A stretch of 64,000 nt of DNA from Oopsacas minuta (Eukaryota; Animalia; Porifera): positions 310,001 to 374,000 of the forward strand of contig JAKMXF010000033.1 of the NCBI GenBank assembly GCA_024704765.1. The letters run 5' to 3'. Shown in pieces: positions 4,240-52,456 of this stretch. Made by a program: the position numbers and the translations under genes. The notes under the pieces are model-generated. The model saw nothing but the letters and a program-made list of their open reading frames with translations. It had not been told where the DNA came from and searched no databases. Within the stretch, counting starts at the first letter, position 1. The number at the start of each line of letters is the position of its first letter.

Positions 4240-4574
4240 TTCTAATGATTCTAAGCTAGATTGTGCCTAGTAAAATAACTGATAAAACTCGTAAGAGCGA
4301 TAATTACCTTAAAAGTTTTATCAGTTTATCAATTAAAGCAGAATTGCGTTGTAGTAATGAAGTTTATCAAAACAGCAATGCTTTGAAGAAATGTCATCTA
4401 ATTTTAGTAGTACATTCGTATATTACGAAATTCTGATACTAAGATAAAGCAGTGATAATGTCTATAAGAAGTATTAATGGATTAATACTTAATTCAGAAT
4501 CTATAAATATAGAAACTTATAACAAAAAATAAGAAATTCAAAATTTCTAAATTCGAAGAAAACTGCGCTATAAA

Positions 4575-5063
4575 ATGGAAGCAATATCAATAACAAATTC
4601 TGATATCAAGAGTTACTACACCTGCAATCAGTTAGCAGAGTATAGACAATTATTCGGGACATTTGAATTGAATAAAGATGGTCACATTACTTGTACACAA
4701 CTCAAAAAATATCTAACAGGAAATTATATGAAAAAGAGCAATGAAGAGTTAGAAGAAATAGTAAATGAAGCAGATTTAAGCGGGTGTGGTCGTATTACAT
4801 TCGACAATTTTATGCAACTGATCCTAAACAGAGACTTAGAGGAAAAAAGAACTGAGATTAAATCATTATTTGATAGCTTTGATTCGAACAGAGACGGATA
4901 CATTGACATAGCAGAACTATCAGCTGTATTCTTCTCACTCAACAGCAAAGATGAGAATCAAATAATAACAGTATTCAAACAGCTGGACAGAAACAATGAT
5001 GGTAAAGTGGATTTTGAAGAGTTCCATTCATTTATGGCACAAGGCGATGACTTGAAATTATAG
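4575..5063 (+). CDS. Calmodulin-like four-EF-hand protein, copy 1
   Basis: 162-aa ORF with EF loops ELNKDGHITCTQL (degenerate), DLSGCGRITFDNF, DSNRDGYIDIAEL and DRNNDGKVDFEEF. A TATAAAT lies at about 4502. Confidence 0.9.
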   Translation: MEAISITNSDIKSYYTCNQLAEYRQLFGTFELNKDGHITCTQLKKYLTGNYMKKSNEELEEIVNEADLSGCGRITFDNFMQLILNRDLEEKRTEIKSLFDSFDSNRDGYIDIAELSAVFFSLNSKDENQIITVFKQLDRNNDGKVDFEEFHSFMAQGDDLKL

Positions 5064-5531
5064 GCTTCAGTAATTATAGCAGTGTATCCTTGAGTAAAAT
5101 AGTAATATATAAATATTGCCTGATTTGTTGAAAAATTAATAAATATACGCTTACATATCAAACGAATTTGCTTAATTACTCATAAGATATATCCATAAAT
5201 TGTATACTCCATGCGCTGTCGAGTTACTGTGACCTATTTAGCGAACTCTTAGTTTATTCAAAACGACTTCAATCAATAGTATGATTTACCAATTTTTAAC
5301 ATACGTAATTCAAAAGGAATAAGTATAACTTCCGCTGTGTGAATAGAAACATATAATAAGATCAGTTTACATCCTTAAACCAAATTAATGAACTAGTTGT
5401 CGCAATTACCAACACAACTATCGTCAGTGCATTGCTATCAAGATTGAACATATCAGTAATTAACTACAGAATCATATAAATACATCTATTTCTAATCGAA
5501 TGTTAAAAATAATATAATTTCAATTAGAAAC

Positions 5532-6023
5532 ATGCAAGCCTTACTACCAGCTCAGTGCGAACTATTCCTAAACCAATATACATGCTCAGAATTGGCCGAA
5601 TACAAACAATTATTCGGTACAATCGATCCAAACAATGATGGCTACATAACTTGCAATCAACTCAAGAATTATTTGATGTGTTCCATGAATCATATAAGTA
5701 GTGAAGAGTTAGAAGAAATAGTAAATGAAGCGGATTTAAGCGGGTGTGGTCGTATTACATTCGACAATTTTATGCAACTGATCCTAAACAGAGACTTGAA
5801 GGAAAAAAGAACTGAGACTAAATCAGTATTTGATAGCTTTGATTTGAACAGAGACGGATACATTGACATACTAGATCTATCAGCCGTATTCTTCTCACTC
5901 AACAGCAAAGATGAGAATCAAATAATAACAGTATTCAAACAGCTGGACAGAAACAATGATGGTAAAGTCGACTTTGAAGAGTTCCAAGAGTTTATGGATT
6001 ATTGCAATGACTTGCCATTCTAG
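5532..6023 (+). CDS. Calmodulin-like four-EF-hand protein, copy 2 (tandem paralog)
   Basis: 163-aa ORF with loops DPNNDGYITCNQL, DLSGCGRITFDNF, DLNRDGYIDILDL and DRNNDGKVDFEEF. Its 3' part is nearly identical to copy 1 at a 960-bp offset. Confidence 0.9.
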   Translation: MQALLPAQCELFLNQYTCSELAEYKQLFGTIDPNNDGYITCNQLKNYLMCSMNHISSEELEEIVNEADLSGCGRITFDNFMQLILNRDLKEKRTETKSVFDSFDLNRDGYIDILDLSAVFFSLNSKDENQIITVFKQLDRNNDGKVDFEEFQEFMDYCNDLPF

Positions 6024-38322: not shown

Positions 38323-39645
38323 CTATTGGAGAGATGGTTCAGATGAATAATGTATTGGAATACCAGTTTGTCCAGTTTGAACTATAGATGGTGCTATTTC
38401 AGCATTGGGCTCTAAGCCTTGCCAAGTTCTGTCTCGGAGGAAGACAGTTGCATCGTTTTGCCTTTTATCCTGAACTGCATAATCGTATTTTACTTGAAGT
38501 TCAGTAGTTTGACTCTCTGAGAAGTCATTTCCATCTGTATCATGTATTTCCTCATTAATACGAAGAGATGAAAAGTTTACTATATTACTATTAACATCGT
38601 TAATATAATTATCAGTAATGACAGAGCAGTGAGAATCCGTGAGGGAGAGATAGAGTTCATTAGGTGTAATTATTGGTTTATAGAACTCACTAGAATCTAG
38701 TATAACATTCTCTGGACATCCTAATAACACGAAAATATCGATTTCAAGAAAATTTGCTAGCTTAGTGGGCTGAATATTCCCCATAGATATTGTATAATAT
38801 TCCTTCCCTTTCTTTCGCAGAGCAGACTTAATGTCAGATATTATGTGTAAACAATCGGCGAGCCACATATTTCCTATAAGAATGCCTATAATAGCCGCGG
38901 AATCGACTTTTTGCATCAAATAATATCTCTTTTTAAGAAGCTTACTCTCATTACCAAGCTGTGTTATGGAATTAGAATTAGGTGAAAGTAAATAGAAATT
39001 ATTTGAATGAAAAGCTAATTTGAAATTCAGACAAGTACGGTTTTCTTCACCTATGAATAAAACAGTATAATTTTCTCTAGAGAATTTGAGAGAAATCTTT
39101 CTACCAAAACATATTTCATTAACATGAGTATCTGCTTCTGTCGTGTGTTCTGTTAATAGCTCTGAGTACTCCAGATTAATATAATCACTTTTTAGTACTG
39201 TGTACATGCCCTTAGCCAATTTATAACAATTCGTGTTGTAAATTAATAGAATTGGGGTATCTCTGGTTACAAATAAATTCTGCACTAATTCAACTAACGG
39301 AAGATAGTCTACTTGTAGCTCATTGAAAATATAGAGAGTTGGAATAGCTGTTACTCGGCTGAAACAGGAATTCCCAAAGTGTATGATGCAATTACAATTT
39401 AATTTCTGAGCTTGAATCTCGTCGATACAACAAGAATGATAAGGCGAATCGCCAATGATAAATATATTCTTACCCGTTTTTGCTTCTAGGACATTTGTCA
39501 AGGCAACAGCGTATTTTAGCAACTCAGATGGAACTTGCAAGGCTACGCGGTTACAATCACAATTTTGGATAAATTCACAACATCTCTCTAACTCGAAATG
39601 ATTAGGAATATTCGTGTGAGCAAAATATTGTCCATGATCTGCCAT
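38323..39645 (-). CDS. DPH2: Diphthamide biosynthesis protein 2
   Basis: RVALQVPSELL, IIGDSPYHSCCIDEI, IIHFGNSC, LKKRYYLMQK, KLANFLEIDIFVLLGCPE, FYKPIITPNEL, FLRDRTWQGLE and GQTGIPIHY. Confidence 0.93.
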   Translation of the reverse strand: MADHGQYFAHTNIPNHFELERCCEFIQNCDCNRVALQVPSELLKYAVALTNVLEAKTGKNIFIIGDSPYHSCCIDEIQAQKLNCNCIIHFGNSCFSRVTAIPTLYIFNELQVDYLPLVELVQNLFVTRDTPILLIYNTNCYKLAKGMYTVLKSDYINLEYSELLTEHTTEADTHVNEICFGRKISLKFSRENYTVLFIGEENRTCLNFKLAFHSNNFYLLSPNSNSITQLGNESKLLKKRYYLMQKVDSAAIIGILIGNMWLADCLHIISDIKSALRKKGKEYYTISMGNIQPTKLANFLEIDIFVLLGCPENVILDSSEFYKPIITPNELYLSLTDSHCSVITDNYINDVNSNIVNFSSLRINEEIHDTDGNDFSESQTTELQVKYDYAVQDKRQNDATVFLRDRTWQGLEPNAEIAPSIVQTGQTGIPIHYSSEPSLQ

Positions 39646-39910
39646 TAATTTATACTAATCTATTCCATTTAAGTACAATGTGAACAAACTGTAATATAAA
39701 TATGGGTAAGGTTATATTTAAAGTTAGTCATATCTAGTAAGAAAGAAATGATCAAGCAGAGTATTTACGGCTGTCTATTGTGAGATGATTATTTACAAAT
39801 GCATATAGGATTCATAATATATGCAATTATACTCAAATTCAAGAATGTGTATTTCCATTAAAATTCAAAAAAAAATATTACAGAATTTTAGTCAATTTCT
39901 CGATCTTGTC

Positions 39911-42133
39911 TCAATCAATCTTCTCAGCTAATCGTTGACTCTCACTGAAGGTTTTCTTAATAGTAGTAGAAGCAATAAAGTGAGGTCCATCGTCTTCATA
40001 TTCCATATACTTGTAGAAATATGACATGATGCCAAACAGGAAGGAAATCACTATCGCAGCTCCCGCGAAGAAAAAGAATTCTACAACTTGGCTTGAAAAA
40101 AGTTGGAATTGAGATACAAAGAAAACAAGCAAATTCCCAAAAGCAACAGTTAGCAACCACATAGCCAGCATTACAGATTTCAAACTAGCAGGCGACTGCG
40201 AATACGCGAATTCTAACCCCGAAATTGAGAACATAACTTCACCAACCGTCATTACAAAGTACATAGGTATTTGCCATAGAAAAGACACACTTCGATCTAT
40301 ACCAAGAGAAGGCTGTAGGAACACGCTACCGCTATCATTAGCGTAAACGAGCAATGATTTAATATCACCGTTCAATACACTAAATGCTATAGATTTGTTG
40401 GAAAATTCTAGAAAAAACTCTCCTTCAGGAATCCTGTAGAATTCAGATATTCCTAAAGCAGGTACAGAGCTATTAAAATATATTTCATCGCCCTGATCCT
40501 GTCGTATAGAGAACAGAATATCTCTGGATAGTGAGTTAATATACTGGACAGAAGCCTCGTATTTTGTTACCTCAGGACGAGCTAGGTTCATATCGGTACA
40601 ATATGGCTTAACGGTGGGTGAATTGGCGAGCAGAACAGTACAAGTCAAGGTAGAATTAAGGTTTACACCGTAATTGTAAGATTGCTTCGAACCAGAGCTT
40701 TCAACAGTAAATGAGAGAGAATATTTCCCTGACGAAAGGGTGCTCTGATTAAAATCACCTGGCTCTACCGTTGAATTAAGTATTAGAGTATTATTGCTGT
40801 TGAATATACTGACATTAGCCTGATGTGATGTGGGATTGAATAGTTTTAGGTAAGTCATATCGTTAGGGGCAGAAAGGTCCGCTCCAGCCTCGATCTGAAT
40901 TTGCACTATAGCTGATAAAATGAAAGCTACTCCAGCGAGGAAAATTCCGATTGTCATTTTCCGTAGCGTAGTTACCTTGATGCCACACTTACGAACTAAT
41001 GGGTAAATGATTTTATCGAATATAGGGATAAATACCAGTATAAAGATAGGATTTATTATCTGCACTTGATCAGGATGTATACTGATTACACCGATTGATG
41101 TATACATTCTAGCGACCTGAAATAACCAGCGAGATCCTTGCTGATCGAATAATGCCCAGAATATAGGCAGTGGAAGGAACATAACGAACACTTTCACAAC
41201 TGCCTTAACCCCCACAACTAATGATGTATCGTATTTAGGCACAGCCCAATCGAGCCAATGATCCTTCTTTATACCACTTTTCCGTTTTTTGAACCTCTCC
41301 TTAATGGCATAGAATATGATAGCAAATATCTGTACATACACATTCCGTCCTGTAGGAGGAACCTTAACGTATAGGAAGCTACCAGCTATAAACACGATAA
41401 TGGAGCATATCATTAGGATTGCTGGGACACCAAATGATGCTACATAACAATCAGCTCCAAAACACTGTATATCTCTACGTAAAATCGGTGTTAGGAATAT
41501 AGAGAGAAGACTACCAGCGTTTATTGAGAAATAGAAAAGCGAGAAGAACGCCGCTAGCAAGGAAGGATCGCCTTTCTTAACCTGATCGCCTCCAAAAGCA
41601 GATACGCAAGGCTTAATTCCTCCTGTCCCTAGCGCAATAAGAATCAACCCAATTATACAAATAGCAAGTCTTACCGGTATAATGTTAGCGACAAGACAAG
41701 GAACAGCTGATAGAGATATAAGGACACATCCAATAGCATATATGATAGAATATATTAGAATTGTCTTAAATTTACCGATATAGCTATCTGCCATCATGGA
41801 TCCGAATATGGGCATAAAGAATGCTAAGAATGTGTACATATGGAATACAGCAGTTGCGTTGTCTTCACTAACGTCCAATTGGAATGTAAGATATAGCACT
41901 AACACTGCTCGCATACCGTAGTACGCAAATCTCTCACAGAATTCATTTCCAACTATGAAATATACACTAACCGGGAAACTGGAGAAGAATTTACAAAATT
42001 GGGTGAATCGGGAAGACAATTTGGGTTTTTGGGGTTTAGGATGGATCGCGATATCTACAGTATTCTCATTGTCTGTTTCTCCAGCGATGGAGCCGTTTTC
42101 GCCTATTAACTTTGTCTTCTCTTCAGAGGCCAT
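39911..42133 (-). CDS. Proton-coupled oligopeptide transporter (SLC15A1/A2, PepT family)
   Basis: Intronless 740 aa with the ExxERFxYYG motif (NEFCERFAYYGMR), GTGGIKPCVSAFGGDQ, FYFSINAGSL, FWALFDQQGSRW, a large extracellular domain and GLEFAYSQSPASLKSV. Confidence 0.96.
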   Translation of the reverse strand: MASEEKTKLIGENGSIAGETDNENTVDIAIHPKPQKPKLSSRFTQFCKFFSSFPVSVYFIVGNEFCERFAYYGMRAVLVLYLTFQLDVSEDNATAVFHMYTFLAFFMPIFGSMMADSYIGKFKTILIYSIIYAIGCVLISLSAVPCLVANIIPVRLAICIIGLILIALGTGGIKPCVSAFGGDQVKKGDPSLLAAFFSLFYFSINAGSLLSIFLTPILRRDIQCFGADCYVASFGVPAILMICSIIVFIAGSFLYVKVPPTGRNVYVQIFAIIFYAIKERFKKRKSGIKKDHWLDWAVPKYDTSLVVGVKAVVKVFVMFLPLPIFWALFDQQGSRWLFQVARMYTSIGVISIHPDQVQIINPIFILVFIPIFDKIIYPLVRKCGIKVTTLRKMTIGIFLAGVAFILSAIVQIQIEAGADLSAPNDMTYLKLFNPTSHQANVSIFNSNNTLILNSTVEPGDFNQSTLSSGKYSLSFTVESSGSKQSYNYGVNLNSTLTCTVLLANSPTVKPYCTDMNLARPEVTKYEASVQYINSLSRDILFSIRQDQGDEIYFNSSVPALGISEFYRIPEGEFFLEFSNKSIAFSVLNGDIKSLLVYANDSGSVFLQPSLGIDRSVSFLWQIPMYFVMTVGEVMFSISGLEFAYSQSPASLKSVMLAMWLLTVAFGNLLVFFVSQFQLFSSQVVEFFFFAGAAIVISFLFGIMSYFYKYMEYEDDGPHFIASTTIKKTFSESQRLAEKID

Positions 42134-42320
42134 TAACTAATATACAAGGAATAATGCGCTTAGTCATACACTTAAGTATAAGGCTAATATACATACTTAA
42201 ACCTTACAGAGAGGAGAGTGTAAAACTACTTATTCAGAATTATAATTTAACATCCTACGGAAGAGATCACAAATCTCTACAAACAATAAAGCTTATGGCG
42301 AGAATATAGAAATTATAACA

Positions 42321-42486
42321 CAGTCAACTCCTGTTATATAGAAGCTCAAGGGATCGCGATAATCACTTCGATATAACCGATAAATATATGTTACTTTGAT
42401 GGTTTGGACCATATTTGTACAATTTAAGCCTTCGATATAAGCGGGTATTTTGATATCCCCGTGTTCAATATAGCGGGAGTTGACTG
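42321..42486. mobile_element. MITE family A
   Basis: CAGTCAACTCCTGTTATATAGAAG ... ATATAGCGGGAGTTGACTG|TA. Confidence 0.88.
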
Positions 42487-43710
42487 TAATTAATTTAACT
42501 ATTGCTATAGTAAGACAAGAGTTGCAGTTGCCATAATGAAATATTGTCATTAAGTTTAGAATTCTAACATTATACGTTTTACCCCACAGAATTATGCAAG
42601 TATTAAAACCAACAATTATTCTCCAATGAATAATAACTAGTTTCAAAGTCTGATAACAACAACTATTAAAGTATTCAGGGCATCTGGCATCGGTAAAAGA
42701 TCAAAATTCTGTAATTAAATTGCTACCACACCAAATCATGTAGAATGATAGAAATATATTAACATTGATAGGGCAAGTCATGGAAAGGCTTAGAACATAT
42801 GTGGAAAATTCTTGGAAAGGCGATAGCACATGAATAAATATGAGAAAAAGTATTCTATTTCATTCCACATATTTCTAAACTAACAAGTTTTCTCTACATA
42901 CATTATCAAATAGTTGTCTGACCACTAGCTAATCCTGTACGAAAAATTTTCCAATAATTCGGTAATAATGAGAAACAGACTATATAACCTATACCCTAAA
43001 AAGTTGGTAGGCAGTATCTACACGCTAAATTAGCTATTCTACGAATATAGAGTTAGAAATTATCGCATGAATGCGATCAATTGTAGAGCTCAATAATTCA
43101 GGTTGAATACATTCTAACTGTATTGTCAGCAATTATAAGATGAATGGATCTATGCGAAGTGTAGCGATTATACACTATAACCTTAAACCAAATCAGTAAA
43201 TATGTGCTAATGGATCTGAATTATTGAAATGTTGTTTATCAATATGTCTAATTTGTTTATTCTAAACAATAAACAATAAACAAAATAGAGCATAAATAAA
43301 TAATATAATTTCCAGCATCATATGTTCACGTAACAAGTATATCTCTATGATTTACCAAAATTATACAAGTGGAGCCTCAACACGTGGGGCCTCCTGAAGC
43401 TGGGTTAAAATATGTGTCAAAACATTGATCAGAATGTAAATGAACCTCTGAAAGCGGGAAGAGGGTTTCGGAGACCAAATATAGGGTACCCAACCTCCCA
43501 GCTTCGGGATGTTCCAGAATATACGTATAAAATTTAGTTGGTATAACTCTTCAGTTAGAAATCACATATATGGTGCTATTAGACTAAGTCACTAAGAGAT
43601 GTGATATGTAATCAGAGCAAAACAAGATAAAACACATGAACTATTGAATCAACACATAAGGAACCTAAATATGGAGTGAAACGAAAAGGGGCCAATCCCC
43701 CTATAAGAAT

Positions 43711-44058
43711 TTATTTGTCATAAGCATTTATACTTGACTTTTGATACTCTTCAATTAATCTCAATTCTTTGCTGAATTGAGGTAAATTCTTGAGCTTCTG
43801 GTCTAACATTTTCTTTTCAGAAATAATCTTATCCCAATCAATAGGATCAGTAGAAATTATTTTCTTATCAGATTTTACGCTAGATCCATTGGATTCCAAT
43901 TCAGCACATAGGTTGTCAAGTTTTAGAGGTATTTCACTAGCTAGTATCACAGATTGATCAAGCTTAGAAACCGCGGATTGTTGTTGTAACTTAGACTTTT
44001 CATAGACAGAGAGAAGCTCTGCGAATTCGGGCTCTTCTCCTGAGAATGTTCGATACAT
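43711..44058 (-). CDS. Hypothetical 115-aa helical/coiled-coil protein
   Basis: ATG-initiated ORF with natural amino acid composition, co-oriented 96 bp downstream of PRPF4; no family recognised. Confidence 0.55.
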   Translation of the reverse strand: MYRTFSGEEPEFAELLSVYEKSKLQQQSAVSKLDQSVILASEIPLKLDNLCAELESNGSSVKSDKKIISTDPIDWDKIISEKKMLDQKLKNLPQFSKELRLIEEYQKSSINAYDK

Positions 44059-44154
44059 TTGTTAGAAAACAGAATTGCTAGTATTAACGATGCATCATCT
44101 AAAGTAAATAACAACAAACAACAATCTATAAAACTGCAGCAAAAAATAAAATAT

Positions 44155-46095
44155 TTAATTATGAGTTGTCTGCCATAATTTAAAAGTTCTATCATAAGAA
44201 GTGGTCAGGATATAGTTGTCATCTTCTGATACATCAACACACATAACTTTATCATCATGTCCAGCTAGCGTCCTTAAAGGAGCCCATCCAGGATGTAACC
44301 AGGCCTTAGCAATCCTGTCATACCCAGAGGTGAGAAGATATTGTCCTGTTGTCTTCTGGAATACCACGTGGGACACCAGATTCTTGTGTGCGGGGAGAGT
44401 ATAAATACAGCGTCTACCTCTCAGGTCCCATATCCGAGCTGAATGGTCTTCACTCCCAGTAGCTACACTTACACCGTTTGGAGAGAAGTCAATCGCTAGA
44501 ACATTACCAGAGTGTCCTCCTAGCAGCATTATACACTTCCCACTTCTCAGATCCCACATGCGTCCGTACGCATCCAAACCACAGGAGCCTGCAAGAGAAC
44601 CGTCTGGATGGAAAGCTATATTGTAGAGGGGCGCGGAGTGTCCCTCCTGATGTAACACCTCTGTACAGGTCTCTAGGTCCCAGAGACGCCAGGAGCTGTC
44701 ATAACACGCAGTACCTATGAAACGACCTGAAGGGTGGAATGACAGTCTTGATACTCTCTGTAGATGTCCCTGCAGGGCATGTAGAGGGCTAGGAGAGGAT
44801 AGACTCCACAAGAACACAGAACCGTCAGCAGCACAACTAGCTAGATTCAAACCTGTATCAGTTTGTGCTAGAGTTGATTGAGGATGAAATTTGATACAAG
44901 AGGCTCTATCCTTGTGTCCTTTAAGGGTGTGTAGTGTATCGCAGGCTGGTATAGACCAGATCTTACAATCTCCACTCCAAGAGGAAGTAGCTACCAGTTT
45001 AGAATTGGGAGAGAAGTGACAGAATGATACAGGTCGTGTGTCTCCTATCTGACTACAGTAATTGGAGAGAGAGGAGAGGATCTTCTGTATAGCTTGCCTC
45101 TGTTTAGTCTTTTCTTCTTGGAATAAAGTTCCTTTCTCTGATTTAGATTTCTCAATTGATATACGAGCTTTTGCTTGAGACAGCGAGTACTCACTTAGCC
45201 AATACCTATACAGTGGATTGTAAAGTTAATGAGCTTTCTGATACAATCAACTCACGTTAATCGAAGCTCAAGGAGCGCGATATATCTCGATATAACCTGT
45301 GAATAATATGTTACTTTGAAGGTTTGGGACCATATTTGCACGAATTCAGACTTTAACATAACGGGAGCTGTTTATCACTACAAATTACTGAGATACATAT
45401 ACAATGTTATATTACTTATAAACTGACCTACATGTTTTGAGTAGATCTGGTCCTAAATGATACCAAACTTGGTCAGCTGACTCGCCCTTACTATCACCTG
45501 GAATAGTCGACTGAGAAATATTTTTCTTATTTGTATCAGCTATTTGAGGAGAAGGCTGTTGTTCAGCTACTAGAGCCTTTAACCTGTCTCTCCTGTCAGC
45601 TGGATTCTCACCGAATAGAATTCTAGGTTCATCTAATTCCAGAAGGCGAAGTTTTACCTAAAATATTTGTAGTATTGAATAGTAATTTAACTCCCATTAT
45701 ATCAAACACGGATATATCAAAATACCCGCTTATATAGAAGTCCCAAACCATTAAAGTAACATATATTTATCGGTTATATGGAAGTGATTATCGCGTCCCT
45801 TGGGCTACGATATAACAGGAGTTAACTACATTTCACTACCTTATGATTACTATATTTTTACCTGTTCATCGTCAGTGGGTACAACTATGGATTTAAGGAA
45901 CTTTTTCCTTTCAAAAAGAGCCAAAATTTTCTGCTCTCTCATCTTGCTTAGATTCTCTAAATCCATAACATTTCCTTGAGATACATCAATATTCCCAGCT
46001 GCTATACCTTCTCTTAGAGCTTCACTTTGATCTAGCATCGTCTCTAGTTTACGTCTCTTACCTCTCGTATCACTCTCTATCTCTGCTGTAGACAT
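44155..46095 (-). CDS. PRPF4: U4/U6 snRNP protein Prp4 (3 exons, about 504 aa)
   Basis: Exons 46095-45862, 45657-45428 and 45205-44155 join in frame. Contains VPTDDEQVKLRLLELDEP..FGENPADRRDRL, WYHLGP and WD40 repeats (ACYDSSWRLWDLE, QEGHS, GSEDHSARIWDLR, TSYDRTFKLW). Confidence 0.96.
45244..45371. mobile_element. MITE family A in PRPF4 intron 2
   Basis: TA|CAATCAACTCACGTTAATCGAAGCTCAAGG with the family core and a decayed right end. Confidence 0.78.
45685..45829. mobile_element. MITE family A in PRPF4 intron 1
   Basis: AACTCCCATTATATC ... GATATAACAGGAGTTAAC with the inverted family core. Confidence 0.78.
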
Positions 46096-46180
46096 TCTAT
46101 TATGCTATAATACTGGAAGAGTAGCAAGAATAGAAACAGTATAAGTGGAGATTCTTCCAGGTGATAGCAAATTAGCAATA

Positions 46181-46337
46181 TAGTAGATGTCAGTTATAAG
46201 TACACCCTTGGGAGTAGCAATATGATTCTTATAACTGGCATAAAAGATTCAGGAATATATGAGACCAATTTTCCATAGGATGGTGCTTATATTCAGCATG
46301 CTATTATATCTGTTGTTCTTATAACCTACATCCACAG
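46181..46337. mobile_element. MITE family B
   Basis: TAGTAGATGTCAGTTATAAG ... CTTATAACCTACATCCACAG|TA. Confidence 0.8.
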
Positions 46338-46534
46338 TATAATTTAATAGGATGACTCGGGGGAACCATTCTACCCATTCGAAGCTTCCAAGCAGGTATT
46401 ACAATATTTGATTATACATCTTAATAAAAATATAATAAATATAAATGATATTGGTTGAAATTCTATAATGCCTTGTAACTTTATCCAAGAGATGATTATC
46501 AGCTGTTAGAAGCAGGAACATCTACAGCTAATTC

Positions 46535-47854
46535 CTAAATTAAAGAATTTACATAACTTATAAATTTGTAAAATATTAAGAAACTCACTTCAATTCTATC
46601 CAATACTCCAATCAACTTGTCTACTTCCTCTACAGTATTGTAGTGCATGAATGATACTCTAACTACACCCACATCCAAGGCTATACCCAGTCTCTCACAT
46701 ATACGATAAGCCTGTAAGTGACCCTGTCTTACATACAGATTATTACTAGAACAAACTTGCTCGATTTTGTATGGAGAGATGGTGGAATGTTGAAATGAGA
46801 TAATCCCGACTCTACCTTTGATAGAGCTAGTTTTTGGGCCGAATAATCGGTAACAAGATTTGCTAAGCAGAAACTCAATAAATTTAGTGATTAGAAATTG
46901 TTCAAACTTTTCCATAACCTGATAAGCTCTCACTATAATATCCCTGGTACAAACTGTAGAAATAGGTTGTCTTAGAATTGTATTAAAGTAGTCAGTCAAA
47001 CCATGAAAAGCAAATAAATTTCCAGCTTGAAAAGGGCCACCTATCTCAAACTGTTTTAAATAGTTCGATTTATCCTGGTATCGATTCCCTAACCCTGGTA
47101 TAGAATCAAAATCCTTTCTCTTCCCATATAACACACCAAATCCAGGAGCACATGCTTTATAGCTTGCAAAGAAATAGAAATTACAATCAATATCTTGTAC
47201 ATTAGGACATTTATGTGGTACATACTGTGCGCCATCTACGACTACAACTACTGAGTTATTCATTGCACGTATGTCCTGTATAAGCTCTTTACAATTGTTA
47301 ACTTCTCCCAGTAAATTTGATGTATTAGAGAATGTTACTATTTTAGTACGACTGTTAACCAATGACGTCACATTGTCTATACAATTGTATCCATCTTGAG
47401 TAAACTCCCAGAAGCGGATAACAACGCCCTGCTTCTGTAGGTCTAACCATGGAGAGATATTGCATTCATGGTTAGAAGTACTGACAATAATCTCATCGCC
47501 TGGTACTAGAATATGTCCGTAAGCTATTGCGAGTAGTCTAACTAGTAGCGTGGCAGATTGACCTAACACAACTATTTCATCTCCTGCGTTTAACCATAAC
47601 TTTATGACGTCACGAGCAGAGTCTAGCTTCTCAGTTGTCTGTTTAGAGAGAAGAGAAGATTCACCTGTATTAAAATTGTGTAGTGTTACGTATTCTATTT
47701 CTCTGTCTATGAGGAAATGAGGGGTTTGACTACAAGCTGCGTTATTGAACAAAGCCCAACCACTTTTGCTACCAACTAGACCAACCCCAGAGAGAGCAGG
47801 GAACAGATCACGTATGTATGTAGATGTTATAGCTTGTTCTATATCGTTAGACAT
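46535..47854 (-). CDS. PLP-dependent class V aminotransferase / cysteine-desulfurase-like protein (bacterial-type subfamily without the persulfide Cys)
   Basis: FNNAACSQTP, PGDEIIVS..NHECNISPW, VVDGAQYVPH, FASYK (PLP lysine) and VVRVSFMHYNTVEEV. A GTGAGT donor at 46588 suggests the last few residues may come from an unresolved terminal exon. Confidence 0.88.
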   Translation of the reverse strand: MSNDIEQAITSTYIRDLFPALSGVGLVGSKSGWALFNNAACSQTPHFLIDREIEYVTLHNFNTGESSLLSKQTTEKLDSARDVIKLWLNAGDEIVVLGQSATLLVRLLAIAYGHILVPGDEIIVSTSNHECNISPWLDLQKQGVVIRFWEFTQDGYNCIDNVTSLVNSRTKIVTFSNTSNLLGEVNNCKELIQDIRAMNNSVVVVVDGAQYVPHKCPNVQDIDCNFYFFASYKACAPGFGVLYGKRKDFDSIPGLGNRYQDKSNYLKQFEIGGPFQAGNLFAFHGLTDYFNTILRQPISTVCTRDIIVRAYQVMEKFEQFLITKFIEFLLSKSCYRLFGPKTSSIKGRVGIISFQHSTISPYKIEQVCSSNNLYVRQGHLQAYRICERLGIALDVGVVRVSFMHYNTVEEVDKLIGVLDRIEVSFLIFYKFISYVNSLI

Positions 47855-47918
47855 GTCTATCACTCAAATAACTACGTATATAATTAATATTTCTGTGATT
47901 GGTAACTCATATATTATA

Positions 47919-48054
47919 CTGTGAATGCGGTCATAAGAACACCCTTGGGAATAGCAATACATGTTCTTATAACCGGAAAATATACAGGAATATATGAAAA
48001 CGGTTTTCCCTGAAGATGGTGCTTATAGCGGCGTTCTTAAACCAACATCAAATG
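47919..48054. mobile_element. MITE family B (decayed)
   Basis: CTGTGAATGCGGTCATAAGAACAC ... GATGGTGCTTATA ... AACCAACATCAAATG|TA. Confidence 0.72.
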
Positions 48055-48605
48055 TATGAAGTGTGAAATAAACAGAATTATTCATTACAATATAATACTA
48101 TTGTTAATAATTATTCTCAATCTCTATTTGTATTAATATTCTGTCTCATACGTCTTCTCTCATCTATTTGCATCTTATGTACAGCATATACTGTATACAT
48201 TGAAACTGCTAATGACAAGTATAGAAGGAGAGAAGGACCTGAATATCTCATAGCAAAATCGTGTATAATCAATATTGTAGTGATAGCTAGGAGTCAATCA
48301 TTATAAAAACTAATTACAAAAGTAAAAGAATAAAAAAATTTTGTTTAGAGAGGTGTATATACAGGGCTTACAGCCTGTATATACACCCCACTAGGGGAGG
48401 CAGATACGTACTCCTAGGGCCGCTTGTAGGAAGCTCCGGGTATTTCCCCTAAAATAGATCGTCTAGCTGCCTAGGCGGATGAGTGGGTAGTTATTTCACG
48501 CGACAGCCCTAGGGAATAATAAAGTTTAAAATTTAAGAATATGTTTCAAAGAGCATACAAACTAAGAGTATTTACACGAATAACTAATTCAGAGTAAAAA
48601 TAAAT

Positions 48606-51317
48606 TCATTCCAAGAGGCCAACTATCACCATAAGAGAGATACCCAACCCAAAGGTAAATATCTCCACGAGAGATCTCAATTTAGATTTAGAAGTAAGCA
48701 TTTCCGGTAGTATAGATACACATCCAATGTATATAAATCCTCCAGCAGTGAATGCTAGTATATAGCTAGTAGCAGATTGAAATAGGTTCTCTGCATAGAG
48801 ACCACAACATGTCCCAAGCATAGCTCCTATAGCTGTTACTAACTGCATTAGCATAGCTCTGGATTTAGAAAATCCTGAACGGACAAGTATAGCAAAGTCT
48901 CCAACTTCATGTGGAATCTCGTGTAGTAATATAGTCAGTGATGTCACTAGACCGACATTAGCACTGATGAGGAAAGAAGCACCGATAGCAAGACCGTCTG
49001 TATAGTTATGTGTGAAGTCAGCTATCAGGTTGAGGTAAGCTGAGATTTTTATCCCGGGGATAGACGAGACAGAAGGGGCCGTTTTCGTAGGAATGGGGTT
49101 TGGCTTTATAGCAGTGTTTTTCTTCTTTTTAGGAGAAGATGGTGGTTTCGTATCCGTTTTCTCTGTGACAGTTACTTCCTTCTCAATCTCTTTCTTCTTC
49201 TCGTTGTGGTAAGTACCCTCTTTCTTCCCGTGTGAGTGTGAGTGGCCACTGAAATCGATAATAGCTTTCTCTATCAGAAAGAACATAACTACCCCACTGA
49301 GAATAAAGCAACCTATAATAATCTCATCGTTATGAGAGTGCACTTCTGATTCGTGATCATGCTCTGAATGTTGAGAGTGTGAGTGTGGAGATACTGCATG
49401 GGGAATGAGATGTAGAAATGCGTCCCCTAATAGTCCCCCCGCTGCGAAACTTAACAGAGCCTGTGTGAAGGCAGATTCCTGAGAGTTACTAGCAGGTAGA
49501 GGGAGTAGGATAAGTACAGGGGCTATGCTGATTATTGCTGTTGCAGTGAATGCATATTTTATGCTAGCGCCAAATGATAAGTCTCTATCTGCTAAGTCAA
49601 TTGGAATATATTTGTTAATAAAGCACAATACCTTAGTGATATATACAGACTCATGTTTGTGAGAATGTTCCTCTCCATGAGAATTAAATTCCTCTTCGTG
49701 AGAATGAGATTCCGGGATATCTGATGAAACAATAACTTCAGGCTCCGGTATATCGGTTGGAGCAATTACTTCAGGCTCCGGTATATCTGATGGAGCAATA
49801 ACTTCAGGTTCCGGTATATCTGATGGAGCAATAACTTCAGGTTCCGGTATATCTGATGGAGCAATGACTTCAGGTTCCGGTATATCTGATGGAGCAATGA
49901 CTTCAGGATCCGGTATATCGGTTGGAGCAATGACTTCAGGTTCCGGTATATCTGATGGAGCAATGACTTCAGGATCCGGTATATCGGTTGGAGCAATGAC
50001 TTCAGGTTCCGGTATATCTGATGGAGCAATGACTTCAGGATCCGGTATATCGGTTGGAGCAATGACTTCAGGTTCCGGTATATCTGATGGAGCAATAACT
50101 TCAGGTTCCGGTATATCTGTTGGAATTATGACTCCAGGCTCCGGTATATCTGATGGAGCAATAACTTCAGGTTCCGGTATATCTGATGGAGCAATAACTT
50201 CAGGTTCCGGTATATCTGATGGAGCAATAACTTCAGGTTCCGGTATATCTGATGGAGCAATGACTTCAGGATCCGGTATATCGGTTGGAGCAATGACTTC
50301 AGGTTCCGGTATATCTGATGGAGCAATGACTTCAGGATCCGGTATATCGGTTGGAGCAATGACTTCAGGTTCCGGTATATCTGATGGAGCAATGACTTCA
50401 GGATCCGGTATATCGGTTGGAGCAATGACTTCAGGTTCCGGTATATCTGATGGAGCAATAACTTCAGGTTCCGGTATATCTGTTGGAATTATGACTCCAG
50501 GCTCCGGTATATCGGTTGGAGCAATGACTTCAGGTTCCTGTATATCAGGAGCTATAACTTCAGGTTCCGGGATATCTGTTGGAGTTACGACTTCAGGATC
50601 CGGTATATCTTTTGGAGTTACGACTTCAGGTTCCGGTATATCTGTTGGTGTAATGACTTCAGGTTTCTGTATATCAGGAGCCATAACTTCAGGCTCCGGG
50701 ATATCTGTTGGAGTTACGACTTCAGGTTCCGGTATATCTGTTGGAGTTATGATTTCAGGTTCCGGTATATCTGACGGAGTAATTACTTCAGGCTCCGGTA
50801 TATCTATTGGAGTTATGACTTCAGGCTCCGGTATATCTGATGGAGTAATTACTTCAGGCACCGGTATATCTATTGGAGTTATGACTTCAGGTTCCGGTAT
50901 ATCTGTTGGAGCAGTGACTTCAGGTTCCGGTATATCTGATGGAGCAATAACTTCAGGTTCCGGTATATCTGATGGAGCAATAACTTCAGGTTCCGGGATA
51001 TCTGTTGGAGTTATGACTTCAGGTTCCGGTATATCTGTTGGAGCAGTGACTTCAGGTTCCGGTATATCTGATGGAGCAATAACTTCAGGCTCCGGTATAT
51101 CTGATGGAGCAATAACTTCAGGCTCCGGTATATCTGATGGAGCAATAACTTCAGGTTCCGGTATATCTGATGGAGTAATGACTTCAGGTTCCGGTCTATC
51201 TAATGGAGTTATGACTTCAGGCTCCGGTATATCTGATTGTGTTTTAACCTTTTTTGATATCAAGAATGAAGGTGACAAGAGTAATAGTGTTCCTAGAAGG
51301 AACAAATTACACTTCAT
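48606..51317 (-). CDS. SLC39A7: Zinc transporter ZIP7 (LIV-1 subfamily) with a roughly 500-aa acidic tandem-repeat N-terminus
   Basis: Signal peptide, repeat, His-rich HSHEEE, LLSFAAGGLLGDAFLHLIPHA, AYLNLIADFTHNYTDGLAIGASF, HEIPHEVGDFAIL and AFTAGGFIY. Confidence 0.95.
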   Translation of the reverse strand: MKCNLFLLGTLLLLSPSFLISKKVKTQSDIPEPEVITPLDRPEPEVITPSDIPEPEVIAPSDIPEPEVIAPSDIPEPEVIAPSDIPEPEVTAPTDIPEPEVITPTDIPEPEVIAPSDIPEPEVIAPSDIPEPEVTAPTDIPEPEVITPIDIPVPEVITPSDIPEPEVITPIDIPEPEVITPSDIPEPEIITPTDIPEPEVVTPTDIPEPEVMAPDIQKPEVITPTDIPEPEVVTPKDIPDPEVVTPTDIPEPEVIAPDIQEPEVIAPTDIPEPGVIIPTDIPEPEVIAPSDIPEPEVIAPTDIPDPEVIAPSDIPEPEVIAPTDIPDPEVIAPSDIPEPEVIAPTDIPDPEVIAPSDIPEPEVIAPSDIPEPEVIAPSDIPEPEVIAPSDIPEPGVIIPTDIPEPEVIAPSDIPEPEVIAPTDIPDPEVIAPSDIPEPEVIAPTDIPDPEVIAPSDIPEPEVIAPTDIPDPEVIAPSDIPEPEVIAPSDIPEPEVIAPSDIPEPEVIAPSDIPEPEVIAPTDIPEPEVIVSSDIPESHSHEEEFNSHGEEHSHKHESVYITKVLCFINKYIPIDLADRDLSFGASIKYAFTATAIISIAPVLILLPLPASNSQESAFTQALLSFAAGGLLGDAFLHLIPHAVSPHSHSQHSEHDHESEVHSHNDEIIIGCFILSGVVMFFLIEKAIIDFSGHSHSHGKKEGTYHNEKKKEIEKEVTVTEKTDTKPPSSPKKKKNTAIKPNPIPTKTAPSVSSIPGIKISAYLNLIADFTHNYTDGLAIGASFLISANVGLVTSLTILLHEIPHEVGDFAILVRSGFSKSRAMLMQLVTAIGAMLGTCCGLYAENLFQSATSYILAFTAGGFIYIGCVSILPEMLTSKSKLRSLVEIFTFGLGISLMVIVGLLE
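49725..51236 (-). repeat. Coding minisatellite: about 46 units of 33 bp (two of 30 bp) encoding [S/T]DIP[E/D]PEVI[A/T]P
   Basis: Counted from the translation: 44 units of 11 aa and 2 of 10 aa; includes a 363-bp higher-order duplication. Confidence 0.97.
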
Positions 51318-51547
51318 AGCTAGAACTATAGCCTACTGCCCTACTATAATTAGAATAGGCTATGCTAGAACAAATATAAGATTTGATAACTGCAAATTCA
51401 GAATTCAGGGCCGTTCAAAGTGAATAAAGTTCCCTGAACATATTCATTTCTTGTCATAGTCCATACATATAACAAATCATATTTATGATTATATAAAAAG
51501 TGTTCAAATTCAAAAAGATACCTACAAACAGCTATTAATAAATAAAA

Positions 51548-52456
51548 TCAGTTAGCAATCATTTCACGAAGTCTTGTATTAACCATCAATACGCCAGGTC
51601 TAATATCAGGATCTAAGGCTAAAATCCATCTAAGTAACTCCCCAAAACCCTGACTATACCTGCCTCCCCTTTGAGCAGTGGGTATACACAAACGTCCACT
51701 TAGTGTACTCATAACAGTTCCATCAAATGGAGGCTCTCCGTATGCCATGGTGTATATAGTACAGCCCAGAGACCATACATCTGTCTTAGCAGTTATCAAC
51801 CCGGGCGAGGGGCAATCGAACAGTTCAGGAGCTCTGAATGTAGCAGTGCTCTCCTGAGCTGCTCTTTCCTGTAAGACAAGTGCCTCCTGTCTGTTGTTGA
51901 TCCTAACCTCTGCTTCTCGTACACTCCCTAAATCCATGAGCACTGCATGACTCATGTCATCTGGTAGAAGTACATTATCAGGCTTTAGGTCCCTATGAGC
52001 TAATGGTGGTGTTAAGCTATGCATGTATTCTAATCCATTACATATTGAAATGCTTAGAGTTATAATTAACAACTGTTTCTTGTCCAGTACTTTCTGATCA
52101 GCTCCCTCTCTTACATTAGGATCTATCCAATTCTGTATTGTACCTCTTGAATAGTAAGGAAATACAAGTCTTGCTTCTTGTGAATTATTGGATCTCTTCA
52201 AGAAATCATGATTGAGTAGAGATAATATATTTGGATGTGTTAGTTTCTGGTGTATACTGATTTCATGTAATACTGCATTCTCCTGTTCTTCATAAGCTAT
52301 TTCTATACGTTTCAAGGCTAGCTGTCTGCCTGTAGGATCTGCGACTAGGTCTACAAACGAGAATGCCCCCTCTCCTATTCTTCGCACCACTCTATAGTTG
52401 ACCTCTCCAACCTGTAGTCGATTGAACCCGAATAAGAATGATATCCATCCTCCCAT
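51548..52456 (-). CDS. STK16: Serine/threonine kinase 16 (NAK family)
   Basis: MG N-terminus, IGEGAFSFVDLV, ALKRI, AHRDLKPDNVLL, MDLGS, LQERAAQESTATFRAPELF, DVWSLGCTIY and RPG. Confidence 0.92.
   Translation of the reverse strand: MGGWISFLFGFNRLQVGEVNYRVVRRIGEGAFSFVDLVADPTGRQLALKRIEIAYEEQENAVLHEISIHQKLTHPNILSLLNHDFLKRSNNSQEARLVFPYYSRGTIQNWIDPNVREGADQKVLDKKQLLIITLSISICNGLEYMHSLTPPLAHRDLKPDNVLLPDDMSHAVLMDLGSVREAEVRINNRQEALVLQERAAQESTATFRAPELFDCPSPGLITAKTDVWSLGCTIYTMAYGEPPFDGTVMSTLSGRLCIPTAQRGGRYSQGFGELLRWILALDPDIRPGVLMVNTRLREMIAN

What the first reader, a model, noticed from the sequence alone, without database searches (positions are those of the whole stretch)
49725..51317. ZIP7 with a roughly 500-aa acidic proline-rich repeat ectodomain
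Seen: after the signal peptide come about 46 repeats of [S/T]DIP[E/D]PEVI[A/T]P (about 3 acidic and 3 Pro residues per 11, almost no basic, aromatic or Cys residues), then a much shorter His-rich segment than mammalian ZIP7 and a normal TM domain, all in one exon. Established: ZIP7 exports Zn from the ER/Golgi lumen and normally has a His-rich lumenal N-terminus without such repeats. Inference: an extended polyanionic, possibly O-glycosylated, rod that binds cations or acts as a lumenal spacer. If the host is a glass sponge, a link to silica-depositing compartments is worth testing, since its biosilica proteins are also rich in acidic residues, Pro and His.
Basis: partly seen in the sequence, partly recalled or inferred. 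Interest (0 to 1): 0.75.

Follow-up and report, generated by a model that had tools for sequence, protein, structure and literature searches.

The report
Glass-sponge ZIP7 with acidic proline-rich repeats
The only ZIP7-type zinc transporter of this glass sponge really does carry about 46 copies of an 11-residue acidic, proline-rich repeat on its lumenal end. A distantly related sponge has a homologous array at the same place, but what the array does is untested and nothing ties it to silica.

Summary
One uninterrupted ORF (48606..51317, minus strand, 903 aa) encodes, in order:
- a signal-peptide-like start;
- 46 tandem units (44 of 11 aa, 2 of 10 aa) of [S/T]DIPEPEVI[A/T]P;
- a short His-rich segment;
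- a full-length ZIP domain whose best named relatives are all SLC39A7/Catsup/KE4.

The assembly matches the published Oopsacas minuta (Hexactinellida) genome in size, scaffold number and GC.

New here: a syntenic ortholog from an unnamed sponge, seen in three independent ENA assemblies and only 69-74% identical in protein, carries a 10-aa unit (TPEEPVPENI, at least 24 copies) in frame at the same place. The two units share 20 of 30 nucleotides and the same three proline codons in the same order. The unit is therefore inherited and each array has been homogenised separately.

Codon tests favour translation. pN/pS is 0.40 in the coding frame against 0.52-1.54 in the other five, and every indel is a multiple of 3.

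None of 216 other ZIP7-family proteins has a proline-rich N-terminus. The repeat's only look-alikes are mucin-type stalks, which are analogues, not relatives.

Most likely it is a disordered polyanionic stalk (net charge about -133), possibly O-glycosylated, on the lumenal side of the transporter. Cation collection is my best guess at mechanism. Near-neutral expansion is a serious rival. The silica link has no support. This is a new variant of a known transporter, of moderate interest.

The parts
48606..51317 (-). Complete single-ORF gene for a 903-aa ZIP7 (SLC39A7/KE4-type) zinc transporter, stop codon included
   Evidence: ORF; Pfam Zip E 3.9e-64; best named hits all SLC39A7/Catsup/KE4; a public record holds the identical 903-aa protein
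51237..51317 (-). Start codon and signal-peptide-like N-terminus (aa 1-27; hydrophobic core aa 3-21)
   Evidence: Kyte-Doolittle peak of 1.81 at aa 3-21, with Lys residues before and after. The cleavage site is inferred; no signal-peptide predictor was available
49710..51236 (-). Array of 46 tandem units (33 bp / 11 aa; two units of 30 bp) encoding [S/T]DIPEPEVI[A/T]P, aa 28-536
   Evidence: D2, P4 and P6 are invariant; E7, V8 and P11 nearly so. pN/pS is 0.40 in this frame against 0.52-1.54 in the other five
50154..50516 (-). Higher-order block A (units 23-33, aa 268-388)
   Evidence: 360 of 363 nt identical to block B
49791..50153 (-). Higher-order block B (units 34-44, aa 389-509), a near-identical copy of block A
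   Evidence: 99.2% DNA identity. Either a recent duplication or the part of the array whose copy number is least certain
49650..49709 (-). Short lumenal His-rich segment SHSHEEEFNSHGEEHSHKHE (aa 537-556; 6 His)
48621..49556 (-). Pfam Zip domain (aa 588-899), the transmembrane core
   Evidence: hydrophobic segments listed
49326..49400 (-). His-rich loop between TM2 and TM3 (aa 640-664)
48993..49010 (-). TM4 metal-site motif HNYTDG (aa 770-775)
   Evidence: Its role is inferred from the established ZIP metal centre
48897..48923 (-). TM5 LIV-1 signature HEIPHEVGD (aa 799-807)

Best explanation
This is the single ZIP7 (SLC39A7/KE4) ortholog of the glass sponge Oopsacas minuta. It has an ordinary, apparently intact zinc-transporting core.

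Between its signal peptide and the His-rich segment that precedes TM1 lies a lineage-specific array of 46 units of 11 aa. The array is translated and, from the established ZIP topology plus the signal peptide, faces the ER/Golgi lumen (or the outside, if the protein reaches the surface). It amounts to about 54 kDa of chain with one Pro and one acidic residue in every 3.7 residues, a charge of about -133, and no aromatic, Cys or His residues. Such a chain cannot fold compactly and should be an extended, disordered polyanion, possibly carrying O-linked sugars on the Ser/Thr at unit position 1.

The mechanism I think most likely is a tethered anionic brush at the entry side of the channel. It would attract and loosely hold divalent cations (Zn2+, and Ca2+ in the ER) and pass Zn2+ to the adjacent His cluster and the pore. 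In other words, a low-affinity, high-capacity antenna or buffer that also keeps the transporter's mouth sterically clear.

The array evolves by unit turnover. A related sponge has the same unit in a diverged 10-aa form, homogenised separately.

Shown: the architecture, ZIP7 identity, homology of the two species' units, and codon-level constraint. Inferred: topology, disorder, glycosylation and cation binding.

My odds: a real translated domain 0.85; composition or length kept by selection 0.6; the cation-antenna mechanism specifically 0.35.
For: - Architecture and ZIP7 identity.
- Intact metal-site motifs HNYTDG and HEIPHEVGD.
- It is the only ZIP7-type gene in the genome; the one other LIV-1-type ZIP is a short 270-aa protein.
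- Translation. The frame runs unbroken from the signal peptide through 1527 bp of repeat into the core. TRF reports no indels, and the two short units each lack exactly one codon. pN/pS among units is 0.40 in this frame against 0.52-1.54 in the other five. D2, P4 and P6 are invariant; E7, V8 and P11 nearly so. A public record holds the identical 903-aa protein.
- Conservation. A syntenic ortholog has the gene order ZIP7, Aminotran_5..., PTR2, Diphthamide_syn, with proteins 69-74% identical. It carries at least 24 in-frame TPEEPVPENI units directly before its His-rich segment in three independent assemblies. The two consensus units share 20 of 30 nt (P about 0.0002 against shuffles), including the CCA, CCG, CCT proline codons in the same order. 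Both have 3 Pro, 3 acidic and no basic residues.
- Uniqueness. None of 216 ZIP7-family N-termini exceeds about 8% Pro, against 24% here.
- Disorder. The public model has mean pLDDT 0.39, and no hydrophobic segment lies inside the array.
- Stalk analogy. The nearest look-alikes among 1.84 billion representatives are Mucin-like, SEA-domain, mucin-2-like and ANTXR-type stalks.
- O-glycosylation is feasible. There are two GalNAc-transferase-type genes, and Ser/Thr sits at position 1 in 40 of 44 units with Pro at -1 and +3.
- Precedent. His-rich extracytoplasmic segments of LIV-1 ZIPs bind zinc at low micromolar affinity (review PMC7949119).
Against: - There is no expression, protein, localisation or binding data.
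- Carboxylates bind Zn2+ only weakly, and in the ER they would mostly hold Ca2+.
- The frame must be kept whatever the peptide does, because the essential core lies downstream. Frame preservation alone therefore does not show that the peptide matters.
- pN/pS of 0.40 is only moderate, and units related by recent copying are not independent.
- The relative's array is very young: 3 distinct DNA units among 24. Long arrays may have expanded separately from a short ancestral seed.
- The ZIP7 N-terminus is a hot spot for low-complexity expansion in other animals too.
- Another note from this scan reports an orphan repeat add-on on a caspase in this genome (unchecked).
- Ser+Thr is only 11% of the array, well below typical mucin domains, and Pfam Mucin-like is not matched.
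- The relative's unit has N-I-T sequons that the window's unit lacks, so no glycosylation pattern is conserved.
- In-frame cryptic GT..AG pairs that would remove the array exist.
Confidence: 0.45

Rival explanations
1. Near-neutral minisatellite expansion. The disordered lumenal N-terminus of ZIP7 tolerates low-complexity insertions. A 30-33-bp unit expanded by replication slippage or unequal exchange and persists because it does no harm. Only the reading frame and the absence of stops are under selection.
For: Other ZIP7s show large low-complexity expansions at this same site: pipefish 375 aa, plus several fishes and a gecko. Both arrays show recent turnover: the 99.2% identical 363-bp blocks here, and only 3 distinct DNA units among 24 in the relative. 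The neighbouring His repeat varies in length between two samples of the relative. The unit differs at about half its positions between the two species. An unchecked note from this scan reports another orphan repeat add-on in this genome.
Against: pN/pS is lowest in the coding frame. Six of 11 positions are essentially invariant over 44 units, even though there are 21 distinct DNA units. The counts of 3 Pro and 3 acidic residues per unit, and the lack of basic, aromatic and Cys residues, are the same in two species that differ by about 30% in ordinary proteins. Both species keep long arrays (46 and at least 24 units). It is the only strong tandem array in 64 kb.
Confidence: 0.3
2. Cleavable pro-domain. 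The array would be a PEST-like ectodomain removed by proteolysis to control trafficking or activity of the transporter, as reported for other LIV-1 ZIPs (N-terminal cleavage of ZIP6, ectodomain processing of ZIP4 and ZIP10).
For: About 64% of the array is Pro, Glu/Asp, Ser or Thr, with almost no basic residues. That is the composition that defines PEST regions (established knowledge). The review PMC7949119 marks PEST cleavage sites in ZIP N-termini and cites ectodomain processing and shedding of ZIP4 and the LIV-1 ZIPs.
Against: No cleavage motif was identified. ZIP7 itself is not known to be processed this way, to my knowledge. A signal for cleavage does not need 46 units.
Confidence: 0.1
3. 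The polyanionic domain would act in, or target the transporter to, the silica-depositing compartment, in analogy to acidic or Pro/His-rich biosilica proteins.
For: The host is a glass sponge. Glass-sponge glassin contains His, Pro and Ser/Thr repeats that differ between species. The array is so far seen only in two glass-sponge-like genomes.
Against: This is the only ZIP7 ortholog, so it is presumably the housekeeping ER transporter. The array has no His. No paper in the library links sponge zinc transporters to silica or spicules. The repeat is not shared with any other gene of this genome. The glass-sponge genome papers do not list a ZIP among biosilicification candidates in the passages I searched.
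Confidence: 0.05
4. The array is not part of the protein. It would be either an intron removed by splicing, or an array inflated by assembly.
For: 116 in-frame, stop-free GT..AG pairs could remove at least 1100 nt of it. The 99.2% identical 363-bp blocks are the kind of structure that assemblers can miscount. Short-read scaffolds of the relative break inside the array.
Against: An intron has no reason to keep unit lengths of 33 and 30 bp, indels in whole codons, the lowest pN/pS in the flanking frame, or frame continuity with both flanks in two species. The best-scoring cryptic donor would also delete the signal peptide. The assembly used PacBio long reads plus Illumina. The relative's long-read contig shows 34-37 copies per arm. 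A public record holds the full 903-aa protein.
Confidence: 0.07

Closest known systems
SLC39A7 / ZIP7 / KE4 / Catsup (LIV-1 subfamily of ZIP transporters)
   Same: Full-length Zip domain. HEIPHEVGD and HNYTDG motifs. His-rich segment before TM1 and His-rich TM2-3 and TM3-4 loops. Best named hits across animals at 42-49% identity.
   Different: A 509-aa His-free acidic proline-rich array sits between the signal peptide and the His segment. The 216 relatives have a median N-terminus of 138 aa and none is Pro-rich. There are only 6 His before TM1, against 34-55 in mammals.
Syntenic ZIP7 ortholog of an unnamed sponge (ENA assemblies ERZ26869290, ERZ23490157, ERZ23489589; loci L016, L097, L098)
   Same: Same gene order. 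Core 69% identical. An acidic proline-rich array lies directly before the His segment, in frame. The unit is homologous at codon level.
   Different: The unit is 10 aa (TPEEPVPENI), not 11. The array is much more homogeneous. It carries N-I-T sequons. Its His-rich repeat is much longer, with at least 26 His. Its 5' end is missing from all three assemblies.
Mucin-type PTS stalks of animal secreted and membrane proteins (Pfam Mucin-like PF16058, SEA-domain proteins, ANTXR-type receptors)
   Same: Short-period (often 11, 22 or 33 aa) Pro- and Ser/Thr-containing extracytoplasmic tandem repeats. These are the best hits of the repeat in the exhaustive search.
   Different: No shared domain and no ZIP core in any of the 150 hits. 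Ser+Thr is only 11% here, and the array is far more acidic. Pfam Mucin-like is not matched. The resemblance is compositional, not by descent.
Extended Glu/Pro-rich segments: trypanosome EP procyclin, the TonB Glu-Pro/Lys-Pro rod, titin PEVK (named from my own knowledge, not tested here)
   Same: High Pro plus Glu content, which in those proteins gives extended, polyproline-II-rich, rod-like or spring-like chains. PEPE and PEV motifs recur in every unit.
   Different: No sequence relationship was tested or claimed. There is no Lys (P+E+V+K is 53% of the array). The array is attached to a polytopic transporter, not to a GPI anchor, an energy transducer or a sarcomere protein.
Large N-terminal ectodomains of other LIV-1 ZIPs (ZIP4 ECD; PrP-like domains of ZIP5/6/10)
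   Same: Extra extracytoplasmic N-terminal modules on LIV-1 ZIPs. Some bind zinc through His-rich loops and are proteolytically processed (PMC7949119).
   Different: Those are folded domains in plasma-membrane ZIPs. This one is a low-complexity repeat on the ER/Golgi-type ZIP7.

Membership tests
ZIP family (Pfam PF02535) | Full-length match to the Zip profile above the curated cut-off | tested here: met
   217.4 bits against a cut-off of 35.1, E 3.9e-64, profile positions 6-322 of 323
LIV-1 subfamily | HExPHExGD signature in TM5 | tested here: met
   HEIPHEVGD at aa 799-807
SLC39A7 / ZIP7 / KE4 orthology group | Closest named relatives are SLC39A7/Catsup/KE4 rather than ZIP13 or other LIV-1 members | tested here: met
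   Every named hit among the best 120 of each of two searches is SLC39A7, Catsup, KE4 or zipt-7.2, apart from uninformative names and gene-model fusions. None is named ZIP13. No tree with ZIP13 outgroups was built, because no ZIP13 sequence was in hand.
SLC39A7 / ZIP7 / KE4 orthology group | His-rich lumenal N-terminus and His-rich loops | tested here: met
   His segment at aa 537-556, TM2-3 loop at aa 640-664, TM3-4 loop from aa 690. The N-terminal one is short, with 6 His.
SLC39A7 / ZIP7 / KE4 orthology group | ER/Golgi localisation and zinc release to the cytosol | not testable with these tools
   Needs localisation and transport assays
Mucin-like PTS domain | Match to Pfam Mucin-like (PF16058) or a Ser/Thr-dominated composition | tested here: not met
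   No Pfam hit other than Zip at E up to 0.01. Ser+Thr is 11% of the array.
Mucin-like PTS domain | Dense O-glycosylation | not testable with these tools
   Only feasibility is shown: GalNAc-transferase-type genes are present, and Ser/Thr is flanked by Pro at -1 and +3.
Glass-sponge biosilica matrix proteins (glassin type) | His-rich HX/HHX repeats and a conserved C-terminal domain, as described in PMC10282587 | tested here: not met
   The array contains no His. The rest of the protein is a ZIP core.

The most novel reading that the evidence does not exclude
The polyanionic array is a selected, glass-sponge-specific adaptation. It would turn the lumenal face of ZIP7 into a high-capacity divalent-cation store or collector. 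A bolder version is that it couples zinc handling to the silica-depositing endomembrane system. Its length and charge would then be tuned by rapid unit turnover.
Probability: 0.1. Interest if true: 0.75.

Novelty: new variant of a known kind. Interest (0 to 1): 0.4.

Why it matters
ZIP7 is a conserved housekeeping gate for zinc release from the ER, and its lumenal N-terminus is poorly understood. Here an animal's only ZIP7 carries a His-free tail of about 54 kDa and charge about -133 at that position, and the tail is homologous between two deeply diverged sponges. This is a natural experiment on what the lumenal end of the transporter can or must do. If the tail binds cations, it would show an alternative to His-based zinc capture. 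If it is neutral, it is a clean example of concerted evolution of a coding minisatellite inside an essential gene. Either way the gene is easy to test by expressing it with and without the array.

Tried and rejected
- Word-index protein search with the repeat alone: nothing at E up to 0.01.
- ESM Atlas search by features on the repeat: no usable hit. The structure hits all had TM below 0.5 and were uninformative.
- Exhaustive phmmer on the repeat: 355 hits, but none of the best 150 has a ZIP motif. Those inspected are mucin-like stalks or a bacterial/phage-like APEV-repeat protein. I rejected them as relatives and kept them as analogues.
- Scan of JGI metagenome contigs for close orthologs: best 39% identity, none useful.
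- Search for long ZIP7 relatives (497-1580 aa): no second glass-sponge ortholog. The long hits are His/Asp/Glu expansions or gene-model fusions.
- Identifying the relative's species from its sample and assembly identifiers: no paper holds them.
- Supplementary tables of the Aphrocallistes paper, to look for differential expression of its ZIP7: not held.
- The glassin paper PMC4577155: not held.
- Exact look-up of the 903-aa protein in the 15-billion-protein collection: not there.
- Excluding splicing from sequence alone: not possible, because in-frame cryptic site pairs exist.
- The bacterial promoter/terminator scan is irrelevant for this eukaryote and showed nothing above shuffles.
- The 519-aa antisense ORF (49864..51423, +) is rejected as a gene. 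It is the repeat read backwards.
- No ZIP7-versus-ZIP13 tree was built, for lack of ZIP13 sequences obtained from a tool.
Full report
WHAT IS THERE. The minus strand of the window carries one uninterrupted ORF, 48606..51317, of 903 aa. Tandem Repeats Finder reports a single array at 49710..51237: period 33 bp, 46.5 copies, 88% matches, no indels. It is the only strong tandem array in the 64-kb window. In the ORF's frame the array reads as 46 units, 44 of 11 aa and two of 10 aa, with consensus SDIPEPEVIAP, covering aa 28-536. Those 509 residues contain 136 Pro, 136 Asp+Glu, 56 Ser+Thr, 3 Lys+Arg, and no His, Cys, Phe, Trp or Tyr. The calculated charge is about -133 and the mass about 54 kDa. 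Before the array lies a signal-peptide-like start with a hydrophobic core at aa 3-21. After it comes a short His-rich segment at aa 537-556 with 6 His, then a full-length Pfam Zip domain at aa 588-899 (E 3.9e-64). The core has the TM4 motif HNYTDG and the LIV-1 signature HEIPHEVGD.

WHOSE GENOME. The window's assembly has 61,460,524 bases in 365 contigs and about 32-47% GC in 2-kb windows. The published Oopsacas minuta (Hexactinellida) genome is described as 365 scaffolds, about 61 Mb and 36% G+C (PMC10280926). The window's other genes are of animal type: URGCP GTPase, TBC/TLDc, NHL, actin. Nothing in the window or in the fetched loci looked human.

WHAT THE CORE IS. Searched without the repeat, the core's best named relatives are SLC39A7, Catsup, KE4 and zipt-7.2 from across animals, at 42-49% identity. 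A second search that admitted proteins of 497-1580 aa gave the same families. No hit among the best 120 of either search is named ZIP13. In the sponge's own genome the Zip profile finds five loci. Only one other has a LIV-1 signature, a short 270-aa protein with no N-terminal extension. The repeat-bearing gene is thus the only ZIP7-type gene and presumably does the housekeeping job of releasing zinc from the ER and Golgi.

THE KEY COMPARISON. The best hit of the core, P0001 (69% identity), comes from ENA assemblies of an unnamed organism.
- Its two short-read scaffolds (L097, L098) show the gene order ZIP7, Aminotran_5..., PTR2, Diphthamide_syn. That is the order in the window. The proteins are 69-74% identical. 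It is therefore the orthologous locus of a deeply diverged relative.
- The called gene models start at an internal Met inside a His-rich repeat. The open frame continues upstream into tandem units TPEEPVPENI.
- On the long-read contig L016 the 30-bp array has 34-37 copies per arm. At least 24 units lie on the part of the arm that is reliable.
- L016 is a fold-back palindrome whose arms differ by 2 nt over 2460. Both short-read scaffolds end in the array at an N gap. The 5' end of that gene is therefore unknown.
- All three assemblies agree that the array is in frame with the His segment and the core.
- Aligned cyclically by codon with a one-codon gap, the two species' consensus units share 20 of 30 nt. 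The mean for shuffles is 13.1, and P is about 0.0002. They use CCA, CCG and CCT for the three prolines in the same order. Both units have 3 Pro, 3 acidic and no basic residues.
- The unit is therefore inherited from a common ancestor, and each species has homogenised its own version.
- The relative's array is very uniform, with 3 distinct DNA units among 24. The window's is older and more varied, with 21 distinct DNA units among 44, apart from two 363-bp blocks that differ at 3 positions.

IS IT TRANSLATED? I had no RNA data, so the case is indirect.
- The frame runs from the signal peptide through 1527 bp of repeat into the core, and the two short units each lack exactly one codon.
- pN/pS among distinct units is 0.40 in this frame and 0.52-1.54 in the other five.
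- D2, P4 and P6 are invariant, and E7, V8 and P11 nearly so. Most change is S/T at position 1, E/D at position 5 and A/T at position 10.
- In the relative the unit is one codon shorter, and the frame still joins the core.
- The ESM Atlas holds the identical 903-aa sequence, so a public gene model reads it the same way.

Against this, 116 in-frame, stop-free GT..AG pairs could remove most of the array, and the best-scoring ones would also delete the signal peptide. Frame preservation is also expected whatever the peptide does, because the core lies downstream. The assembly was a PacBio plus Illumina hybrid, so the array could have been spanned by reads. The near-identical 363-bp blocks are where the unit count is least certain.

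HOW UNUSUAL IS IT? Among 216 ZIP7-family proteins retrieved, the segment before TM1 has a median length of 138 aa, and none has more than about 8% Pro, against 24% here. The long ones are His/Asp/Glu/Gly expansions (a pipefish with 375 aa, other fishes, a gecko) or gene-model fusions. Low-complexity expansion at this site recurs in the family, but a His-free acidic proline-rich array is so far confined to the two sponges. The repeat occurs nowhere else in the sponge genome, by protein or by DNA. The word-index search found no relative of it. The exhaustive search of 1.84 billion representatives gave 355 hits at E up to 0.001, and none of the best 150 has a ZIP motif. Those I examined were Pfam Mucin-like proteins, a Xenopus SEA-domain protein, a chiton 'mucin-2-like' protein, an ANTXR-type receptor with a repeat stalk, and a bacterial/phage-like protein with APEV repeats. 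These are analogues by composition and period, not relatives.

HOW IT PROBABLY WORKS. ZIP proteins have their N-terminus on the extracytoplasmic side (established knowledge), and the signal peptide fits that. The array should therefore lie in the ER/Golgi lumen, immediately before the His cluster and TM1. A chain with Pro at every 3.7th residue, a charge of -133 and no aromatic or Cys residues cannot fold compactly. The public model has mean pLDDT 0.39, and no hydrophobic segment lies inside the array.

My preferred reading is a tethered, extended polyanionic brush. It would attract and loosely hold divalent cations at the entry side of the channel and pass Zn2+ to the His cluster. His-rich extracytoplasmic loops of other LIV-1 ZIPs are known to bind zinc at low micromolar affinity (PMC7949119). 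O-glycosylation is feasible: the genome has two GalNAc-transferase-type genes, and 40 of 44 units have Ser/Thr with Pro at -1 and +3. Those are positions such enzymes are known to favour (my own knowledge). All of this is inference. I put the cation-antenna mechanism at about 0.35, selection on composition or length at about 0.6, and a real translated domain at about 0.85.

RIVALS.
- Near-neutral expansion (0.3). It is supported by the recurrent expansions at this site in other animals, the evident recent turnover and the length polymorphism of the neighbouring His repeat in the relative. It is opposed by the conserved unit composition and invariant positions.
- A cleavable PEST-like pro-domain, as in ZIP6, ZIP4 and ZIP10 (0.1).
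This is the only ZIP7 gene, the array has no His whereas glassin is His-based, no other gene shares the repeat, and no paper in the library connects sponge zinc transporters with silica.
- Not part of the protein, through splicing or assembly inflation (0.07).
- The idea that the array replaces a shortened His segment is weakened, because the relative has both a long array and at least 26 His.

VERDICT. This is an ordinary ZIP7 core with a novel, lineage-specific, homologous-in-two-species repeat domain: a new variant of a known kind. I found no prior report in the searchable library. The gene model itself is already public. Interest is moderate (0.4). The feature is real and extreme, and the cross-species homology lifts it above a one-off low-complexity insertion. 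However, no function is shown, the neutral reading is live, and the most exciting suggestion (silica) has no support.

Noticed in passing
L016:1-5702 (ENA ERZ26869290 ctg36731): The contig is a near-perfect fold-back palindrome. Arms 1-2460 and 3243-5702 differ by 2 nt, and the centre lies inside the 30-bp array. This is most likely a long-read or assembly artefact, and it makes gene callers emit a spurious 784-aa product.
   Followed up: yes
L097:1-1585 and L098:1-1517: Between two samples of the related sponge, the His-rich 21/63-bp repeat of ZIP7 differs by exactly 21 aa (406-aa against 385-aa models). This is a length polymorphism of the His segment within one species.
   Followed up: partly
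L016:3243-4077 (relative's array): The relative's unit TPEEPVPENI carries an N-I-T sequon: 17 in about 250 aa, each followed by Pro. The window's unit has none, so possible N-glycosylation sites are not conserved between the two arrays.
   Followed up: no
G000:C44:819307-820077 (L005 ORF 1486..2298, minus): A second LIV-1-type ZIP in the genome: 270 aa, HEIPHEIGDF motif, no N-terminal extension and short loops. Its subfamily (ZIP13-like or other) was not resolved. The Atlas names its nearest clusters only as ZIP family or ATX2.
   Followed up: partly
G000:C332:1265502-1265858 (L099 ORF 1453..3261) and G000:C177:466567-466920 (L100): Two polypeptide GalNAc-transferase-type genes (Glycos_transf_2 + Glyco_transf_7C + Ricin_B_lectin). 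One is a single 602-aa ORF and the other is split over two ORFs. The glass sponge therefore has the enzymes that start mucin-type O-glycosylation.
   Followed up: partly
window 49864-51423 (+): A 519-aa antisense ORF (MTSGSGISDGA repeats) is open only because the repeat unit has no stop in that frame. pN/pS there is 0.64, against 0.40 in the sense frame. It is not a gene.
   Followed up: yes
window 38323-51317 compared with L097:365-11145: The gene order ZIP7, class-V aminotransferase, ..., POT/PTR2 transporter, diphthamide synthesis protein is conserved between the two sponges, although the proteins are only 69-74% identical.
   Followed up: yes
window 51548-52456 (-): A 302-aa single-ORF protein kinase ends only 230 bp upstream of the ZIP7 start codon, which shows how compact the intergenic spacing is here.
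   Followed up: no
P0153, P0154, P0185, P0132 (ZIP7 of a pipefish, other fishes and a gecko): Several vertebrate ZIP7s have N-termini of 230-375 aa made of His/Asp/Glu/Gly short-period repeats. The lumenal N-terminus of ZIP7 is a recurrent site of low-complexity expansion.
   Followed up: partly
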